Virus record (IMG/VR): IMGVR_UViG_3300043418_000114 | Location: 124,001-188,000 of that record | Strand: one strand, 5' to 3' | Length of the DNA: 64,000 bases | Part shown: positions 2,048 through 8,184 of the stretch, piece after piece | Layout of the letters: each line of letters begins with the position of its first letter | Position numbering within the stretch: the stretch's first letter is position 1 | The notes under the pieces: generated by a model | What the model was told of the DNA's origin: nothing | Database searches by the model: none | The model's input: the letters and a program-made list of their open reading frames with translations, nothing else | Made by a program: the position numbers and the translations under genes

Positions 2048-2674
2048 TTGAAGTATATCTTTGTAGCTGGTGCTCCAGGCAGTAAATGGAGCAGTGTCGT
2101 AAAGAACATTTATTATAGTCCTAGTATTGACCACAGTGATTATAGTGATGAACGTACTTACTATCACGATGCTAGTGGTGAAATGCAGTTAATGCATTTA
2201 GGTGCATATTTTGATCCAGGAATGGAATTCTCGTTACCAGAATCAATGTCAACACTTACAAAGGCGCAAGCAGAAGAAAGATTTGATGCACCATTTTCAG
2301 GCGAAGGTGTTCGCATCATCAAGAGTCACATCTTTTGTTATCAAGAGAATATCGAGTACTTACGTGAGTTGTGGCCTGAATGCCCAATCGTAACTGTGCT
2401 TAGACCTAATGACAGTTGTTTAGGATGGTGGGTACGATGTGGTCATTTCGACATTACATATCCCATCTACGAGCCTTACTACAAAGACTTAAAGACAATG
2501 GCTAAAATCATTGACAAGCAAAACTATGAACTTGAAGAATGTACGTTTAGAAACAAAGCAACCAGAGTTTACAACAACACTAGACTTGCAATGATTCTCG
2601 GCATCCAATCGCCACCTGATGAATATCGCCACAGCTACATTGACAATGATATCACAGTAAGCGTAATACTATGA
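2048..2674 (+). CDS. Sulfotransferase-fold / P-loop-like protein
   Basis: N-terminal IFVAGAPGSKWSS loop, IIKSH and PIVTVLR segments as in sulfotransferase-like proteins. Confidence 0.45.
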   Translation: MKYIFVAGAPGSKWSSVVKNIYYSPSIDHSDYSDERTYYHDASGEMQLMHLGAYFDPGMEFSLPESMSTLTKAQAEERFDAPFSGEGVRIIKSHIFCYQENIEYLRELWPECPIVTVLRPNDSCLGWWVRCGHFDITYPIYEPYYKDLKTMAKIIDKQNYELEECTFRNKATRVYNNTRLAMILGIQSPPDEYRHSYIDNDITVSVIL

Positions 2675-3303
2675 AACAAATGTTAATCATTACCGGGCCA
2701 CAAGGGTCTGGTAATCACGTTTTCAGCAAAATCTTTGCGTTACATAACGAAGTATATGGCTGGAAAGACTTACTTAATGAATATTGGATAGCACATGATT
2801 ATGAACCATTTAGTGATTGTTGGGATATGCCTAGCTTACTTAATAGCATTGACTGGACAAACATGGATAATTACGTCACTAGTATCAGTTGCCCATATGC
2901 AAACGAAGGAGTGGCTACAATCCCTCGGTACAAAGATTTCATCAGTGCATTAACTCAACTTGGTATCACTGTTAAAGTCTGTATCATTGGTAGAGACCAA
3001 ACTATCCTTAGACACCAGCAACAAAGAGTAAGAGATAGACACAGTTTACCTGATTTCGAAGGTGAACTAGAATTTTTAAATTCACTAGAGCCAATATATC
3101 TAAGTACAGAGTTGTTATATTTGTACAAAGACTATTATTTAAAGAGTTTGAGTAAAATCTTAGACTTCCCTATAGCATATGATGACCCTAGAGTGTTTGA
3201 AATATTGAAACAAGATGCAAACGAGAAATACTTTCAGAGTATTCCTCAACAAGAGTTAGACAAAACAGTCCGCAAAGTTAGCGGACTAAAGGAAAAAGAA
3301 TGA
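2671..3303 (+). CDS. Sulfotransferase-fold / P-loop-like protein
   Basis: LIITGPQGSGNH loop and VCIIGRD segment; ATGA-coupled to upstream gene. Confidence 0.45.
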   Translation: MKQMLIITGPQGSGNHVFSKIFALHNEVYGWKDLLNEYWIAHDYEPFSDCWDMPSLLNSIDWTNMDNYVTSISCPYANEGVATIPRYKDFISALTQLGITVKVCIIGRDQTILRHQQQRVRDRHSLPDFEGELEFLNSLEPIYLSTELLYLYKDYYLKSLSKILDFPIAYDDPRVFEILKQDANEKYFQSIPQQELDKTVRKVSGLKEKE

Positions 3304-3992
3304 TTAGTAACTGGGAAACAACAAAAGCAAAAAGCAAATATCACTTTGATAATTTTAAGAATGATCCAACCATGGACAAAGTTGAAGTATTAGGGCGAAT
3401 TACAGGCGACTGGTCGCATGAAGTACAGGATATTATTGCTAACAGCAAACCTGCAACTTGGGAAACACGTGGATACAAAGGCGAAGGTGTTATGCCACCA
3501 CGTGAAGATTTGATTGCAGAAGAATACGACTTAGAGAAAACTGGTTACGGAAAAGACCACCAGATAACACACTTAAACTGGAATGTTCCAGACAAGTTAA
3601 AAAAGATTACTGAAATGTTTGGTCTAGATGACTGCATGGAACGTATTCACGTGCAGATGCCAGGCGAAGTTTGGAATCTTCATATCGACAAACTAAACAA
3701 ATGGTGCCCAGAAGAACCATGGAAAGTAATGCGTGTTATGATTCACTTGACTGATTGGGAACAAGGTCACTTCTGGTCGTATGGCAATCACGTTCATACG
3801 CAATGGCATGCAGGTGATGTTACTACATTTGATTGGCAAAACTTGCCTCATTCTACTGCTAATGCAGGACATAATCCACGTGTTACGTTTCAGTTAACTG
3901 GTGTTGTAACACCCAAAACGCTTGATTTTCTTGCTAGGCTAAAACGGTTTAACACGATACAATTAGAGTACAAAAATGAGTCTTGGTTCTAA
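3300..3992 (+). CDS. 2OG-Fe(II) oxygenase (Asp/Asn beta-hydroxylase-like double-stranded beta-helix)
   Basis: HxD (LHIDK), distal His (PHSTAN) and Arg (PRVTFQ) in typical spacing. Confidence 0.7.
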   Translation: MISNWETTKAKSKYHFDNFKNDPTMDKVEVLGRITGDWSHEVQDIIANSKPATWETRGYKGEGVMPPREDLIAEEYDLEKTGYGKDHQITHLNWNVPDKLKKITEMFGLDDCMERIHVQMPGEVWNLHIDKLNKWCPEEPWKVMRVMIHLTDWEQGHFWSYGNHVHTQWHAGDVTTFDWQNLPHSTANAGHNPRVTFQLTGVVTPKTLDFLARLKRFNTIQLEYKNESWF

Positions 3993-4419
3993 ACGTATAT
4001 TAATCATGGGTCTTCCTGGTTCAGGTAAGACTACCCTAGCGGACGCACTGGAAGAACGGTTCAATTTACGTAACAAAAAGGTTATTAGGTTGAATGCTGA
4101 TAAGATACGTGAAGAATACGATGACTGGGATTTTACTACTGAGGGTAGATTGCGTCAAAGTAAGCGTATGTGTGAATTAGCTAGTAGAATCGAATGTGAC
4201 TATGTTATAGCTGATTTTGTGTGTCCACTTGTGGAAATGCGTAATAATTTTGCTCCAGACCATCTTATATGGATGGACACCATCAGATCCAGTGAATATG
4301 AAGACACTAATCAAATGTTTGTTCGACCAGAGAAGTGCACCTTCAGATTGATAGAAAAAGATGCTAAAAAATGGAGTGAGTACCTGGCGATAAATATAAT
4401 AAAGCTAGATAGCTTGTAA
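3976..4419 (+). CDS. Adenylyl-sulfate (APS) kinase-like protein
   Basis: Walker A GLPGSGKTT, LNADKIRE, DWDFTTEGRLRQ, VIADFVCP: CysC-like. Confidence 0.7.
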   Translation: MSLGSKRILIMGLPGSGKTTLADALEERFNLRNKKVIRLNADKIREEYDDWDFTTEGRLRQSKRMCELASRIECDYVIADFVCPLVEMRNNFAPDHLIWMDTIRSSEYEDTNQMFVRPEKCTFRLIEKDAKKWSEYLAINIIKLDSL

Positions 4420-4521
4420 GAACCCACCTTAGGGCCCGTTGTCGTAACGGTTAGAGCAATGCTCAGGCGTCCGCGCTAATGAACTGCACCGCGTAGTGTG
4501 CCCCGTATAAAGTAAGCGGGA
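4402..4521 (+). ncRNA. Candidate structured small RNA (no family assigned)
   Basis: 57 G+C in 4421-4520 by hand count; several stems; bracketed by ATAAATA at 4390 and 4524. Confidence 0.5.
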
Positions 4522-4534
4522 TGATAAATACATA

Positions 4535-5113
4535 ATGCGTTCCTATCAAATCATAAACGAGTCCCCTGCTACCGAATTGGCCAAGAAATTGCCATCTCTC
4601 CAAAAGCACGACTATGACACCATCGATACCCTGATGCGTAAAATCTCACAGCGTCATCGTATAACTGGTAAGCACTTACATGACTTGTTTGTTAAGCAAT
4701 ATGGAAAAACTCCAGATAACTGGATCAAAGACGATCTATCTGAAGGTGATTCTTCGGAATTAGACATTGATGCGGAAGTTCAGAAGTTTATCAAATGGGC
4801 CGCAAGACGCCTACATCTACAAACTACACCACATATTGAACTGAGCCAAGATACCAAAGACGCACAGGACAATCATCACACAGGACTACATCGTACTGAC
4901 ACTGGTGAAATCTGGATTTACGTAAAGAATCGCAATTTAGTTGATATCTTGCGTACTGTGTTTCATGAGTTGGTACATCATCGTCAAGGTGAGTTAAAGA
5001 TGATTAAGCCAGGTGATAGCTATCCTGGTAGTCCAATCGAAGCAATGGCAGACATGTTGGCTGGTAAATACATCAAGATTTACGGCGAACAAAACCATCA
5101 CATCTTCCAGTAA
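4535..5113 (+). CDS. Late protein with HExxH zinc-metallopeptidase-like motif
   Basis: RTVFHELVHHRQ; ATAAATA at 4524-4530; N-terminus MRSYQIINE. Confidence 0.55.
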   Translation: MRSYQIINESPATELAKKLPSLQKHDYDTIDTLMRKISQRHRITGKHLHDLFVKQYGKTPDNWIKDDLSEGDSSELDIDAEVQKFIKWAARRLHLQTTPHIELSQDTKDAQDNHHTGLHRTDTGEIWIYVKNRNLVDILRTVFHELVHHRQGELKMIKPGDSYPGSPIEAMADMLAGKYIKIYGEQNHHIFQ

Positions 5114-5212: not shown

Positions 5213-5479
5213 ATGTCAGATTATAACCGCTCATTCAATGGCGATGCCAAAATTAAATTAACTCAATTGGTCAACGAAGGTATGACAGTCTTGCACGAGA
5301 TTGACACCCTTCAAGGCGGATTGAACGATACGATCAAGGCAGTCGCAGAAGAATTGGAAATCAAACCAGGCACTCTCAAGAAAGCAATCAAGATTGCACA
5401 CAAGGCAAGCCTGGGTCAAACAAATAAAGACCACGACGAATTGAACACTATTTTGGAAACTGTAGGTAAGACACTTTGA
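5213..5479 (+). CDS. T4 DsbA/GapR-like dsDNA-binding protein
   Basis: 88 aa helical protein, KAVAEELEIKPGTLKKAIKIAHK; AGGAG RBS before ATG 5213; directly upstream of the polymerase. Confidence 0.55.
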   Translation: MSDYNRSFNGDAKIKLTQLVNEGMTVLHEIDTLQGGLNDTIKAVAEELEIKPGTLKKAIKIAHKASLGQTNKDHDELNTILETVGKTL

Positions 5480-8184
5480 GCTACGTTGATGCCATTCATA
5501 GCAGGGATGAGGATCGCATCTACGTGGTAGAGCGTCAGTCAGATGGCCGACGCACCTACAATGAATTCCCTGCTAACTACGTTCTATACTACGACGATCC
5601 TAAAGGAAAGCAACGTAGCATCTTTAACACACCTGTATCTCGATTCAGTACCCGCAAGCGTAAAGAGTTTGAAACTGAAAAGAGAATTCACTCTAACAAG
5701 CAATTGTACGAGAGTGATGTTAACGTTGTGTTCCGTTGCCTAGCCGATAATTATTTAGGTGTTGATGCTCCAAAACTTCACACTTGCTTTTTCGACATTG
5801 AAGTAGACTTTGATCCTATCAAAGGGTTTAGTCCTACTAGTGATCCATTCAACCCTGTGACAGCTATCAGTTGTTATCTAGACTGGATGGACACTTGTTT
5901 CACGTTGGTTATTGCTCCAAAGCATATGACCAAAGAAACAGCAACTGAAATCATTGGTGAATTTGAGAATACAATCTTGTTTGACAACGAGAAGGACATG
6001 TTCGATGTGTTCTTTCAGTTAATCGAAGACGCCGACGTTCTAACAGGCTGGAACTCAGAAGGCTATGATATTCCATACATGGTCAATCGTGTTACACGTG
6101 TTATGTCTAAAGATGATACACGTAAATTCTGTTTGCTTGGACAACTTCCTAAGCCAAGAGAGTATGAACGTTTCGGTAAAGTCGAATTGACGTATGACTT
6201 AGTTGGTCGCATTCACCTAGACTATTTGCAACTCTACAAAAAGTATAACTATGAATCTCGTCATAGCTATAAGCTCGATGCCATCGGTGAGATGGAAGTC
6301 GGCGAGAACAAAACCCAATACGAGGGCACTCTTGATCAGTTATATAACAAAGACTTTAAAAAGTTTATTGAATATAACAGACAAGATACGATGTTGTTGG
6401 TTAAGATCCACAACAAATTGAAGTTCCTTGATCTAGCCAATGCGCTGGCTCATGAGAACACTGTATTGTTACCTACTGTAATGGGCTCCGTTGCCATGAT
6501 TGAAATGGCAATTTTAAACGAAGCTCATGAAAGAGGTTTAGTTGTTCCAGATAAAAAACGAAAGGTAGAAAATGCAGAAGACATTCAATCAGCGGCAGGT
6601 GCCTATGTTGCTACTCCCAAAAGGGGCCTCCACGAATGGGTTGGTGCAGTCGATATCAACTCACTCTACCCGTCAACGATCCGCGCTCTTAACATGGCAC
6701 CAGAGACCATCGTTGCACAAGTCAGACAAACACTTACCGATCAATACATGAGAGAACGCGGTGCCAAACTGGCCCGTGAAAAGAAGTATTACAAAGATGG
6801 TGACGATGACGTTACAGGCGCAATCTTGTGGGAAGGATTGTTTGGTGCTCTAGAGTACACAGCAATCATGAACCAAGAACGTGGTACTATCTTAACTGTA
6901 GACTACGAAGATGGTCGCAGTGTAGAAATGAGTGCCGCCGAGATTTGGAAGATGGTCTTTGATAGCCATAAGCCATGGATGTTAAGTGCAAACGGTACAA
7001 TTTTTACGTATGAGAAAGAGGGTGTAATTCCTGGTCTACTTACACGTTGGTATACTGAACGTAAATCAATTCAGAAACAGGCAAAAGAAGCGTATGGTAC
7101 TGATATGTATGAATACTATGACAAACGCCAGCTTGTTCGTAAGATTTTGCTTAACTCTGCATACGGCGCACTGTTGAATGAACATTGTCGTTTCTATGAT
7201 AAGCGCATTGGTCAATCAGTTACTCTATCTGGTCGTCAGATTGTTAAGCACATGATGAGTACAATCAATGAAACAGTTGAGGGTAAGTATACTCATGAAG
7301 GTGAAGCTATCGTTTATGGCGATACTGACTCATGTTACTTTAGTGCATATGCAACCTTAAAACCACAGATTGATGCGGGTGACTTAGAATGGAACAAAGA
7401 TATTTGTATTGGTCTCTATGACGGCATTGCTGATCAAGCTAACAATACTTTCCCTTCGTTCTTAGAGAAAGCGTTCCATGCTCCTCGCAAGAATGGTGAG
7501 ATCATCAAAGCTGGTCGTGAATTGATTGGTGATCGTAGTATCTTTATCACTAAGAAGCGTTATGCTATCAACATCTTTGACAAAGAAGGCAAGCGTAAAG
7601 ACAAAGACGGAGCATTGGGTGATATCAAAGCCATGGGTCTAGACTTGAAACGTGCAGATACTCCAAAGTATGTGCAAGAATTCTTGATGGATGTACTTGA
7701 AATGGTACTACAACGAGGCAAGGGTAGTGAAGAAGTCATTGAACGAGTGCGAGAATTTAAACGAGTTATGGTATCTCAAGATAGTTGGACAAAGGGTTCA
7801 CCTAAATCCGTTAACAACTTGACCAAGCATACACAAGCGTTTGAAAAGACTGGTACTTGTAAAGTGGGTCACGCACGTGCCGCTATTAACTGGAATTATT
7901 TGCGACGAGTCCATGGAGATAACTACTCTATGCAAATTGTAGACGGCATGAAGATTGTTGTTTGCAAACTCAAGCCAAATGCATTGGGTTTTAACTCAAT
8001 TGCATATCCAGTTGACGAACTCAGACTTCCAGAATGGTTTAAAGAATTGCCATTCGATGATGACGAGATGGAAAAGACACTGGTCGACGAAAAGATTGAT
8101 AACTTGTTAGGTGTTCTGAATTGGGACATTAAGAGTAATATCGACGTTAAATCGACATTCGCCGAATTGTTCTCATTCGGTTAA
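5476..8184 (+). CDS. Family B DNA polymerase (T4 gp43-like) with 3'-5' exonuclease
   Basis: FFDIEV, WNSEGYDIPY, YNRQD (Exo I-III); DINSLYPS, KILLNSAYG, YGDTDS. Confidence 0.97.
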   Translation: MSYVDAIHSRDEDRIYVVERQSDGRRTYNEFPANYVLYYDDPKGKQRSIFNTPVSRFSTRKRKEFETEKRIHSNKQLYESDVNVVFRCLADNYLGVDAPKLHTCFFDIEVDFDPIKGFSPTSDPFNPVTAISCYLDWMDTCFTLVIAPKHMTKETATEIIGEFENTILFDNEKDMFDVFFQLIEDADVLTGWNSEGYDIPYMVNRVTRVMSKDDTRKFCLLGQLPKPREYERFGKVELTYDLVGRIHLDYLQLYKKYNYESRHSYKLDAIGEMEVGENKTQYEGTLDQLYNKDFKKFIEYNRQDTMLLVKIHNKLKFLDLANALAHENTVLLPTVMGSVAMIEMAILNEAHERGLVVPDKKRKVENAEDIQSAAGAYVATPKRGLHEWVGAVDINSLYPSTIRALNMAPETIVAQVRQTLTDQYMRERGAKLAREKKYYKDGDDDVTGAILWEGLFGALEYTAIMNQERGTILTVDYEDGRSVEMSAAEIWKMVFDSHKPWMLSANGTIFTYEKEGVIPGLLTRWYTERKSIQKQAKEAYGTDMYEYYDKRQLVRKILLNSAYGALLNEHCRFYDKRIGQSVTLSGRQIVKHMMSTINETVEGKYTHEGEAIVYGDTDSCYFSAYATLKPQIDAGDLEWNKDICIGLYDGIADQANNTFPSFLEKAFHAPRKNGEIIKAGRELIGDRSIFITKKRYAINIFDKEGKRKDKDGALGDIKAMGLDLKRADTPKYVQEFLMDVLEMVLQRGKGSEEVIERVREFKRVMVSQDSWTKGSPKSVNNLTKHTQAFEKTGTCKVGHARAAINWNYLRRVHGDNYSMQIVDGMKIVVCKLKPNALGFNSIAYPVDELRLPEWFKELPFDDDEMEKTLVDEKIDNLLGVLNWDIKSNIDVKSTFAELFSFG

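What the first reader, a model, noticed from the sequence alone, without database searches (positions are those of the whole stretch)
4390..4530. Candidate novel phage small RNA with its own late promoter
Seen: ATAAATA at 4390, inside the end of the APS-kinase gene, and another at 4524 bracket a GC-rich island (57 G+C in 4421-4520, against AT-rich flanks). Possible pairings: AAGCT-AGAT-AGCTT; an outer stem CCCAC-CTTA with TAAG-CGGG; GGGC(4432)/GCCC(4500); CCGTT-GTCGT-AACGG; GAGC-AAT-GCTC; GCAC-CGCGTA-GTGT. Together these would form a closed multi-way junction of ~100 nt. The next gene has its own promoter, so this looks like a stand-alone transcript rather than a leader. I could not match it to tRNA, SRP, tmRNA or any riboswitch/ribozyme I know.
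Basis: partly seen in the sequence, partly recalled or inferred. Interest (0 to 1): 0.7.

Follow-up and report, generated by a model that had tools for sequence, protein, structure and literature searches.

The report
New pseudoknotted small RNA of phages
The GC-rich island is a real, transcribed, tightly folded small RNA, one member of a large uncatalogued family carried once per genome by freshwater T4-like and jumbo phages. Its most conserved stretch is the mirror image of a universally conserved piece of the bacterial large ribosomal RNA.

Summary
ATAAATA sits at 4390 and 4524, and 4421-4520 has 57 G+C. The island (4420-4521, + strand) has no Rfam 15, tRNA or tmRNA match, and its folding energy is no better than shuffles. 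Comparative data settle the question. More than 300 phage and lake-metagenome contigs carry a homologue, once per genome. Compensatory changes support six helices: hairpins P0, hpA, stem C and hpD, plus two pseudoknots. About 94% of cells are paired against 76% in shuffles, and the covariation score is 0.45-0.49 against 0.14-0.17. A lake metatranscriptome holds an RNA contig that starts at 4438 and runs into the next gene. Function is not shown. The best lead is that the invariant 5' motif ACCUUAGGRCCG is antisense to 23S rRNA at the helix 69/70 junction. In the sister subtype, two further conserved loops are antisense to the adjoining 23S segment and to the 16S 530 loop. The window's subtype is also a perfect 12-nt complement of a unique site in Comamonadaceae RNase P RNA. 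Self-cleavage or transcript-end protection remain open. This is a new RNA class.

The parts
4390..4396 (+). ATAAATA, a possible T4-type late promoter core inside the end of ORF 3976-4419. Its role is uncertain.
   Evidence: Sequence. TAAATA lies within 45-60 nt upstream in 16-19% of family members against about 3% background. In this window 7 of 11 + strand ATAAATA sit 3-9 nt before an ATG, and this one does not.
4423..4434 (+). Hairpin P0: CCC (4423-4425), loop ACCUUA (4426-4431), GGG (4432-4434). The invariant family core CCUUAGG lies here.
   Evidence: Alignment A4: the outer pair is CG in 60 distinct sequences, UA in 14 and UG in 2, and the helix is 97.5% paired. Motif variants were seen once the search no longer fixed the motif.
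4425..4436 (+). Conserved 5' motif CACCUUAGGGCC. It is antisense to 23S rRNA at the helix 69/70 junction and to the 3' strand of helix P9 in Comamonadaceae RNase P RNA.
   Evidence: Window 4426-4436 pairs with Limnohabitans 23S 1899-1909 over 11 bp, one of them G.U. The window-type (T2) member L191 gives 14 bp with one G.U. The sister subtype (T1) gives 12 perfect pairs, about 0.0002 expected by chance. GGCCCTAAGGTG occurs once in each of two Comamonadaceae genomes, inside rnpB.
4436..4450 (+). Hairpin hpA: CCGUU (4436-4440), loop GUCGU (4441-4445), AACGG (4446-4450).
   Evidence: All four model pairs show changes on both sides in A4. The window has one extra C, so its register is shifted by one column in the model alignments.
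4454..4464 (+). Optional hairpin hpB: GAGC, loop AAU, GCUC.
   Evidence: Present in part of the family with different sequences and lengths, absent in many others (alignments A1, A3, A4). Its variation was read by eye and not counted formally.
4467..4471 (+). GCGUC, the 3' strand of pseudoknot PK-A. It pairs with the hpA loop 4441-4445. The window has a U.U at the second position.
   Evidence: 89.7% of cells paired. L190 (GAUACA/UGUAUC), L271 (AAUGC/GCAUU) and L192 (GAUGU/AUAUC) change several positions on both sides. In A4 more than half the sequences carry the U.U.
4472..4493 (+). Stem C: CGCG (4472-4475) with CGCG (4490-4493). It encloses the conserved loop CUAAUGAACUGCAC (family consensus CAAUUGAACUG).
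   Evidence: 93-97% of cells paired. The third pair is UA, CG, AU, GC or GU in different members.
4486..4501 (+). Pseudoknot PK-B: GCAC (4486-4489, in the loop of stem C) pairs with GUGC (4498-4501).
   Evidence: all four pairs change on both sides (GC, UA, AU, CG) and 92.9% of cells pair; 95.4% of cells pair.
4502..4520 (+). Hairpin hpD: CCCGU (4502-4506), conserved loop AUAAAGUAA (4507-4515), GCGGG (4516-4520).
   Evidence: all five pairs change on both sides and 99.8% of cells pair.
4438..4438 (+). Discrete RNA-derived end: either a 5' end of the RNA or a stop of reverse transcription.
   Evidence: In metatranscriptome run X5, a 629-nt contig of depth 36.7 covers 4438-5043 and carries Illumina adapter letters directly before 4438. 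The upstream gene contig ends at 4202 with depth 6.2. A DNA run spans 4386-4536 unbroken.
4524..4530 (+). ATAAATA four bases before the ATG (4535) of the 192-aa ORF; a late-promoter-type motif that sits against the start codon.
   Evidence: The same TAAATA-N5-6-ATGCG arrangement follows the element in many relatives.

Best explanation
Window 4420-4521 (+ strand) encodes a compact, doubly pseudoknotted small RNA. It belongs to a large, previously uncatalogued family present once per genome in freshwater T4-like and jumbo phages. The fold, the coding strand, the family, transcription and independence from neighbouring genes are shown. The mechanism is inferred. The helices form a scaffold that holds a few invariant unpaired segments, and the RNA acts through them on a conserved cellular RNA. 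The best candidate partner is the host large-subunit rRNA. The invariant 5' module ACCUUAGGRCCG is the exact antisense of the universally conserved 23S segment CGGUCCUAAGGU (the 3' strand of helix 69 and the junction to helix 70). Pairing could happen on free or nascent rRNA. That would hold back or steer host ribosome assembly or subunit use during infection. In the window's subtype the same module is also a perfect 12-nt antisense of helix P9 of Comamonadaceae RNase P RNA, which is a second possible partner. The RNA is made by read-through from the upstream gene or from the ATAAATA at 4390. It is found joined to the downstream mRNA.
For: Family and fold. Covariance model R1 recovered 64 and 87 members at E below 1e-8. 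Pair counts gave 93.8% and 93.7% paired against 76% in shuffles, covariation 0.449 and 0.489 against 0.14 and 0.167 (0 of 500 shuffles reached it), and 0.016-0.089 when partners were slid by 1-3 columns. Many G.U to G-C changes fix the + strand as the RNA strand. There is one copy in the 364-kb genome. It is absent from Rfam. Transcription: RNA contig 4438-5043. Independence: neighbouring genes differ between phages, and some copies have divergent or convergent neighbours. Antisense lead, with matches expected by chance in brackets. In the sister subtype (T1), the 5' motif matches 23S 1898-1909 over 12 nt [0.0002]. Its third hairpin loop (L3b) matches 23S 1907-1915, directly abutting the first site [0.02]. 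Its second hairpin loop (L2) matches the 16S 530 loop [0.01]. A conserved loop of the hybrid subtype (T3) matches 23S 1949-1957 [0.03]. The reverse complement of a T1 member against 23S gives z = 4.7. Motif position 15 is A in T1 and G in the window's subtype (T2), and both pair with the U of 23S. The P0 stem covaries while its loop and GG never vary, as expected if the partner is invariant. For rnpB, the 12-mer is unique in two Comamonadaceae genomes and lies in rnpB. One contig (L001) physically joins that rnpB to this phage RNA.
Against: No experiment or read data show pairing with rRNA or RNase P RNA. For the window's own subtype only the 5' motif is antisense: 11 bp with one G.U, local-alignment z = 2.1. 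Its other invariant loops (CAAUUGAACUG, AUAAAGUAA, AGGCGUCCG) have no significant rRNA complement. A simple count of helices of 10 bp or more against rRNA is not above shuffles (P = 0.08 for T1, 0.74 for T2). The motif is partly closed in hairpin P0, and the T1 loop L2 is used in an internal pseudoknot. The 23S target is largely buried in the 70S ribosome. The rRNA and rnpB complementarities were noticed after the fact. A phage with 45 tRNAs that needs ribosomes and RNase P has no obvious reason to block them. The RNA end at 4438 would remove the motif from the rest if it is a true cleavage.
Confidence: 0.45

Rival explanations
1. It is a self-cleaving ribozyme, or a site for a specific RNase, that cuts the polycistronic late transcript at the junction between P0 and hpA (about 4434-4438). 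That would leave the upstream mRNA with a 3' hairpin and the downstream mRNA with a structured 5' end.
For: An RNA-derived contig starts exactly at 4438 with adapter attached, and its depth is six times that of the upstream gene. The chimeric contig L001 joins foreign RNA at 4434-4436. The RNA has two pseudoknots and about 35 invariant, mostly unpaired bases, as in small ribozymes. In 54% of members an ORF stop lies within about 15 nt upstream of the element. HDV-like theta ribozymes are a precedent in phages (PMC10879173).
Against: The two ends differ by 2-4 nt, which does not fit precise self-cleavage. Both could be artefacts: a reverse-transcriptase stop at an RNA hybrid, or template switching at the microhomology ACC..TAGG..CGTTG. 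No Rfam ribozyme family matches, even at E up to 10. The bases around the putative cut vary (G, A or U before it; C, A or U after it). The conserved motif lies upstream of the cut.
Confidence: 0.17
2. It is a cis-acting end-protection or insulator element. The pseudoknotted block stops exonucleases, in the manner of flaviviral xrRNAs or 3' stabilisers. This protects the downstream or upstream mRNA, whatever those genes are.
For: The element sits between transcription units, directly after a stop codon in 54% of members. It is followed by a T-run within 70 nt in 35% and by a new late-promoter motif within 45 nt in 36%. The RNA ends lie 0-3 nt from the base of the hpA/PK-A knot, and their scatter fits an exonuclease stalling there. 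Downstream RNA is more abundant than upstream RNA.
Against: A mere roadblock needs no invariant loops kept over hundreds of diverged phages. The antisense matches would be left unexplained. Contig depths are flat assembler means, so they are a poor measure of abundance. The host and its exonuclease set are unknown.
Confidence: 0.15
3. It is a riboswitch or protein-binding leader that controls the downstream 192-aa HExxH gene.
For: In the window and many relatives the element lies just upstream of that gene family, and the RNA contig is continuous into it. Conserved pockets formed by pseudoknots are typical of riboswitches.
Against: Many homologues of the gene lack the element. Many elements precede unrelated genes (Hsp20-like, ferredoxin-reductase-like, small secreted proteins) or convergent genes. 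A TAAATA motif or a terminator usually separates the element from the next gene. No expression platform overlaps a ribosome-binding site. No Rfam riboswitch matches.
Confidence: 0.05
4. It is a decaying fragment of host RNA genes (antisense rDNA or rnpB) picked up by recombination, with no function of its own.
For: The first 25-30 nt resemble the antisense of 23S helix 69 and its 3' flank. Contig L001 shows rnpB joined at this very spot.
Against: A remnant would not keep six covarying helices and invariant loops in more than 300 contigs whose flanking proteins are only 50-70% identical. The rRNA-like modules are not collinear with rRNA.
Confidence: 0.03

Closest known systems
T4 small stable RNAs, species 1 and 2 (rnaC, rnaD)
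   Same: They are roughly 100-140-nt stable RNAs of still unknown function encoded by T4-type phages. A few members of the new family also sit inside tRNA arrays directly after a tRNA CCA end (L200, L331, L333). The rnaD hairpin CCGG-GUCGCUA-CCGG resembles the conserved third hairpin loop (AUUCGCUAC) of the family's sister subtype T1.
   Different: No alignable similarity beyond that one hairpin. The T4 RNAs have tRNA-like 3' domains and lie in the tRNA cluster. The new family mostly does not: a tRNA lies within 1.5 kb in only 7% of members. It is also built on pseudoknots. No GenBank phage matched by blastn.
HDV-like 'theta' ribozymes of gut phages (PMC10879173)
   Same: Small pseudoknotted RNAs in phage intergenic DNA, some next to tRNAs, thought to process transcripts.
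   Different: No match to any HDV-type Rfam model. The helix order (P0, hpA, stem C, hpD with two H-type knots) is not the nested double pseudoknot. The observed RNA end is 15-18 nt inside the conserved region, not at its 5' edge.
Bacterial RNase P RNA, class A (RF00010)
   Same: One contig (L001) carries Comamonadaceae rnpB fused to this phage RNA, and the fusion scores 70.9 bits. The phage motif is a perfect 12-nt complement of the rnpB P9 3' strand.
   Different: The phage RNA alone gives no RF00010 hit at E up to 10, and none is found in the whole phage genome. It lacks the conserved regions CR-I and CR-V and helix P4. It is a candidate partner or substrate of RNase P, not a member of that family.
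Antisense guide and chaperone RNAs for rRNA (eukaryotic and archaeal snoRNAs such as U3, C/D and H/ACA RNAs)
   Same: A structured scaffold carries short conserved segments complementary to universally conserved rRNA sites. Several sites are matched per RNA in subtype T1. This is a functional analogy only.
   Different: No C/D or H/ACA boxes, no Rfam match, and no partner proteins identified. Nothing comparable has been described in bacteria or phages to my knowledge.
Exonuclease-resistant RNAs (flaviviral xrRNA)
   Same: A compact pseudoknotted fold with RNA 5' ends mapping a few nucleotides before the knot.
   Different: No sequence or modelled structural similarity. Resistance was not tested. 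The host RNases are unknown.

Membership tests
RNaseP_bact_a (RF00010) | Covariance-model score at or above the gathering threshold of 100 bits | tested here: not met
   No hit in window 4300-4650 at E up to 10. No hit in the whole 364-kb genome at E up to 10. Only the chimeric L001 scores (70.9 bits), through its bacterial part.
RNaseP_bact_a (RF00010) | Helix P4, formed by conserved regions CR-I (GGAAAGUCCGG) and CR-V (ACAGAAnCCGGCUUA) | tested here: not met
   Neither motif is present in 4420-4521. The model alignment of L001 stops at position 314, before CR-V. The bacterial rnpB continues differently after loop L15.
tRNA / tmRNA | Cloverleaf with acceptor and T arms, detectable by ARAGORN or Rfam | tested here: not met
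   ARAGORN finds no gene in the window. Rfam finds none. The genome's 45 tRNAs and its tmRNA-like gene lie elsewhere.
Known self-cleaving ribozymes (hammerhead, twister, twister-sister, pistol, hatchet, HDV-like, hairpin, glmS) | Match to the family covariance model or core motifs | tested here: not met
   cmscan of 4300-4650 with permissive filters gave only a snoRNA chance hit at E = 1.9. Sixteen relatives of several subtypes gave no hit for the element at E up to 1. Circularly permuted variants cannot be excluded.
Known self-cleaving ribozymes | Site-specific self-scission in vitro | not testable with these tools
   Only indirect evidence: RNA-derived ends at 4438 and at 4434-4436.
Known riboswitch classes | Match to an Rfam aptamer model and a conserved link to genes of one pathway | tested here: not met
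   No Rfam match. The downstream genes are heterogeneous.
T4 rnaC / rnaD | Alignable sequence, a tRNA-like 3' domain ending in CCA, and position in the tRNA cluster | tested here: not met
   The T4 sequences were read. Only one hairpin is similar. The window element lies about 100 kb from the tRNA cluster. No formal model of rnaC or rnaD was built.
New family defined here (model R1) | 5' motif CCUUAGG in hairpin P0, hpA whose loop pairs with GGCGUC, stem C with loop AAUUGAACUG knotted to the downstream strand, and hpD with loop AUAAAGUAA | tested here: met
   The window scores 91.4 bits, E = 2e-19, over the full model. All helices are present at the coordinates listed under parts.

The most novel reading that the evidence does not exclude
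Freshwater T4-like and jumbo phages encode a dedicated anti-rRNA small RNA. A pseudoknotted scaffold presents antisense modules against the most conserved functional centres of the host ribosome: the 23S helix 69/70 junction and, in the sister subtype, 23S 1929-1937 and the 16S 530 loop. In the window's subtype it also matches helix P9 of the host RNase P RNA. The RNA would pair with free or nascent host RNA to reprogramme or shut down host ribosome or tRNA maturation. This would be the first guide-like or snoRNA-like RNA acting on rRNA in the bacterial and phage world.
Probability: 0.2. Interest if true: 0.95.

Novelty: categorically new. Interest (0 to 1): 0.82.

Why it matters
Phage genomes are thought to hold few structured non-coding RNAs beyond tRNAs, tmRNA, introns and some ribozymes. 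Here a single 100-nt island leads to a family with hundreds of members and several architectural subtypes. It has two covariation-proven pseudoknots and invariant loops, and it is absent from Rfam and from cultured-phage records. That degree of conservation usually marks a ribozyme, a ligand pocket or a partner of core machinery. If the antisense relation to 23S and 16S rRNA or to RNase P RNA is functional, it would show a new way for viruses to take over the translation apparatus: by RNA-RNA pairing with its most conserved sites. It would also hint at Comamonadaceae hosts for the window's subtype of these uncultured phages. Even if the function is processing or stabilisation, it is a compact, portable RNA module with possible uses in synthetic biology.

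Tried and rejected
1. Folding energy: not different from shuffles on either strand, so thermodynamics alone could not confirm the finding.
2. Rfam at gathering and permissive thresholds on the window and 16 relatives: nothing for the element.
3. blastn against GenBank phages and E. coli genomes: no match.
4. 'The element is the 3' third of a phage RNase P RNA' was prompted by L001. I rejected it. The bacterial part of L001 is 94-96% identical to Hydrogenophaga rnpB and ends at loop L15. Bacterial rnpB continues differently. The phage part lacks CR-V and P4. L001 is therefore a chimera.
5. Promoter of a phage RNA polymerase (the motif looks like a T3 promoter by eye): rejected. The motif is single-copy in 364 kb, and it pairs within the RNA (P0 covaries, and it pairs in cis in other subtypes).
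6. tRNA-array association: rejected as a general rule, only 7%.
7. A search for contigs starting at the putative cleavage site in lake metagenomes gave DNA contigs with random ends.
8. A second read-laying run on four further runs gave only a relative's contig.
9. RNAduplex of whole molecules gave meaningless long duplexes.
10. Phage-encoded RnpA or protein-only RNase P (HARP): none found.
11. Sense mimicry of 16S helix 44 or the 23S sarcin-ricin loop, seen by eye, was not supported by alignment.
12. Literature searches found no description of the motif.
13. A kissing interaction between the P0 loop ACCUUA and the hpD loop UAAAGU cannot be tested, because both loops are invariant.
14. Genome G041 was flagged unpublished.
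Full report
**What is in the window.** The window is part of a 364,247-bp IMG/VR virus record with direct terminal repeats. It is a T4-like jumbo phage. It carries a family B DNA polymerase at 5476-8184, 45 tRNA genes and a tmRNA-like gene elsewhere in the genome. The finding lies in the 115-nt gap between a P-loop/APS-kinase-like ORF (3976-4419) and a 192-aa ORF (4535-5113). ATAAATA occurs at 4390-4396 and 4524-4530. Positions 4421-4520 contain 57 G+C, against 36 in the preceding 100 nt and a window mean of 41%. The description is therefore correct.

**Tests that were silent.** Single-sequence tests said nothing. Rfam 15 gave no hit at gathering thresholds and only a chance snoRNA hit at E = 1.9 with permissive filters. 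ARAGORN found no tRNA or tmRNA. The minimum free energy is no better than shuffles on either strand. No sigma-70 promoter or intrinsic terminator was scanned on the + strand.

**A large family.** Relatives fetched through the downstream protein showed a homologous element in many contigs. It starts right after a stop codon with GAACNCACCUUAGGRCC.
- A scan of lake metagenomes with a 3' part of the element found 107 more contigs.
- The element occurs once in the window's genome.
- It is absent from GenBank phages by blastn.

By eye the family has several architectures that share the 5' motif and a 3' motif AAAGU(A/G)A:
- T1, about 80-95 nt.
- T2, the window's type, 92-130 nt, with long forms of about 230-260 nt.
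- T3, a hybrid of the two.
- A further type in which the motif pairs in cis with CUAAGGUG.

**The fold.** I built a covariance model from 28 T2 sequences and re-aligned 64 and then 87 members with it. Pair counting on a structure with two pseudoknots gave these results:
- 93.8% and 93.7% of cells paired, against 76% in column shuffles.
- Covariation scores of 0.449 and 0.489, against 0.140 and 0.167. None of 500 shuffles reached them.
- Scores of 0.016-0.089 when the 3' partners were slid by 1-3 columns.

In window coordinates the helices are:
- P0: 4423-4425 with 4432-4434. The outer pair is CG in 60 sequences and UA in 14.
- hpA: 4436-4440 with 4446-4450.
- hpB (optional): 4454-4457 with 4461-4464.
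- PK-A: hpA loop 4441-4445 with 4467-4471.
- Stem C: 4472-4475 with 4490-4493.
- PK-B: 4486-4489 with 4498-4501. All four pairs covary.
- hpD: 4502-4506 with 4516-4520. All five pairs covary.

Frequent G.U to G-C exchanges fix the + strand as the RNA strand. T1 is structured too. Its P2 stem and the inner stem of its third hairpin (P3b) covary. A pseudoknot between its P2 loop and its 3' tail shows compensatory changes in L242 and L287. The outer stem and GGGC/GCCC clash with covarying helices.

**Genomic context.** I examined 214 distinct elements.
- In 54%, an ORF of at least 45 codons ends within about 15 nt upstream.
- In 36%, TAAATA follows within 45 nt. In 16%, TAAATA precedes within 45 nt. 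Background is about 3%.
- In 35%, a T-run follows within 70 nt.
- In only 7%, a tRNA lies within 1.5 kb.

About 70% of elements have co-directional genes on both sides. Some have a divergent upstream gene or a convergent downstream gene (the screen was loose and includes some false motif hits). The element is therefore an independent unit, not a leader or trailer of one particular gene. In the window, 7 of 11 + strand ATAAATA lie 3-9 nt before an ATG, and none of 6 on the - strand do. The copy at 4524 is of that kind, and the copy at 4390 is not.

**Transcription.** A freshwater metatranscriptome (run X5) holds a 629-nt contig of depth 36.7 covering 4438-5043. At its other end, Illumina adapter letters abut 4438. 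I recognise the adapter from my own knowledge of the TruSeq read-2 sequence. The upstream gene is covered only to 4202, at depth 6.2. A DNA run spans 4386-4536 without a break. The island is therefore transcribed on an RNA continuous with the next gene, with a discrete RNA-derived end at the junction of P0 and hpA. A second read-laying run gave nothing further.

**The chimeric contig L001.** This 2,050-nt IMG/VR contig is 100% identical to the window from 4434 onward. Upstream of that point it carries 200 nt that score 70.9 bits (E = 1e-19) against bacterial RNase P RNA. That part is 94-96% identical to rnpB of Hydrogenophaga and other Comamonadaceae, and it ends in loop L15. Genuine rnpB continues differently. 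Other contigs with the same protein have the normal arrangement. L001 is thus a chimera. Its junction lies in a patch of microhomology, ACCAAATAGGCCAGCGTTGACGT against CACCTTAGGGCCCGTTGTCGT. Template switching is therefore as likely as ligation at a true RNA end.

**Complementarity to host RNAs.**
- The rnpB part of L001 contains GGCCCUAAGGUG, the 3' strand of helix P9. This is the perfect complement of window 4425-4436.
- In two Comamonadaceae genomes this 12-mer occurs exactly once, inside rnpB.
- The P9 sequence is confined to a narrow clade. It was found in 0 of the 30 best-scoring rnpB loci from a class-wide sample of 141 genomes, in 5 of 401 genomes of the order, and in 1 of 91 of the family, that one being the reference genome itself.
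- Inspection of those five hits showed that similar sequence also occurs in 23S rRNA.

I then tested the family's motifs against the 23S and 16S rRNA of Limnohabitans. The number of matches expected by chance is in brackets.
- T1 motif ACCUUAGGACCG: perfect antisense of 23S 1898-1909, CGGUCCUAAGGU [0.0002].
- T2 member L191: 14 bp with one G.U.
- The window: 11 bp with one G.U. By hand, 22 of 24 positions pair through hpA against helix 69.
- T1's third hairpin loop (L3b), UUCGCUACC: antisense of the directly abutting 23S 1907-1915 [0.02].
- T1's second hairpin loop (L2), CGGCUGCUG: antisense of the 16S 530 loop [0.01].
- A T3 loop: antisense of 23S 1949-1957 [0.03].
- The reverse complement of T1 against 23S gives z = 4.7.

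By my memory of E. coli numbering, the 23S site is about 1920-1931, the 3' strand of helix 69 and the junction to helix 70. It is universally conserved, which would explain why CCUUAGG never varies while the P0 stem around it covaries. Motif position 15 is A in T1 and G in T2, and both pair with the U of 23S. The rnpB match holds only for T2.

Several caveats apply.
- The relation was found after the fact.
- For the window's subtype only one module matches (z = 2.1).
- T2's other invariant loops have no rRNA complement.
- Counts of helices of 10 bp or more are not above shuffles.
- The motifs are partly engaged in internal pairs.
- The 23S site is largely buried in 70S ribosomes.

The end at 4438 could be a reverse-transcriptase stop at such a hybrid. 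The phage encodes neither RnpA nor a protein-only RNase P.

**Verdict.** It is firmly established that this is a real, transcribed member of a new, widespread family of pseudoknotted phage RNAs. Function is inferred only. I favour a scaffold that presents invariant segments to a conserved host RNA, with 23S rRNA first and RNase P RNA second. The combined confidence is 0.45, most of it resting on the structural and family claim. Self-cleavage or processing at the P0/hpA junction (0.17) and end protection (0.15) are live rivals. A leader for the HExxH gene (0.05) and a dead host-RNA fragment (0.03) are unlikely. Nothing in Rfam 15, in the phage records or in the searched literature describes it.

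Noticed in passing
L001:1-201 joined to L001:202-2050 (equivalent to window 4434 onward); same record as L402: An IMG/VR contig fuses the 5' two-thirds of a Hydrogenophaga-like RNase P RNA gene (up to loop L15) to this phage's small RNA and downstream genes. It is probably an RT/PCR or ligation chimera at microhomology. It hints that both RNAs were abundant together and that the host may be a Comamonadaceae.
   Followed up: yes
window 4524-4537, and 7 of 11 + strand ATAAATA sites in the window; 28 of 65 on the genome + strand: The late-promoter-like motif ATAAATA sits only 3-9 nt before ATG start codons (0 of 6 on the - strand of the window). With T4-type spacing, transcription would start at or next to the ATG. 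Late mRNAs of this phage group may therefore be leaderless, or the motif may have a translational role.
   Followed up: partly
window 4535-5113: The 192-aa ORF downstream (PHROG 10346, no Pfam hit) contains an HExxH motif (VFHELVHH) typical of zinc metallopeptidases. Homologues follow the RNA element in many T1 and T2 phages but also occur without it.
   Followed up: no
genome C1:225695-240882 (- strand) and 361980-363482: The phage carries 45 tRNA genes in one 15-kb cluster, one with a 4-base anticodon call. It also has a permuted tmRNA-like gene and a tRNA with anticodon CUA near the genome end.
   Followed up: no
L191, L217, L223, L192: about 70 nt upstream of the element: A second conserved, apparently structured segment (CGGGAUGGGAAC-AAGGUUGAAGGUAACCUUG-...) precedes the element in the subgroup that is followed by a terminator and an Hsp20-like gene. 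It may be another non-coding RNA.
   Followed up: no
L200:2060-2135: Directly after the element in a tRNA array lies a tRNA-like sequence ending in GGGCACCA with an odd T loop (UCCGAUU). Neither Rfam nor ARAGORN called it.
   Followed up: no
L510, L511 (rnpB of Limnohabitans and Hydrogenophaga): Comamonadaceae RNase P RNA scores only 180-197 bits against RF00010, whereas other Gammaproteobacteria score about 300-358. It has a long P9 and a reduced P12-P14 region, so it is a divergent class A variant.
   Followed up: partly
window 2048-3992: Three consecutive ORFs upstream (208, 210 and 230 aa) have no Pfam or PHROG hit. The first two begin with P-loop-like motifs (GAPGSKWS, GPQGSGNH), so with the APS-kinase-like ORF they may form a small nucleotide or sulfate-metabolism cassette.
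   Followed up: no
L264, L282, L331, L333, L356 (long forms): Some members carry a 100-150-nt insertion between AGGCGUCC and the last hairpin, whose loop reads GGAGUCGUAACC or GGAAUCGUAACC. L264 ends in a clear intrinsic terminator. These long forms have no Rfam match and were not modelled.
   Followed up: partly
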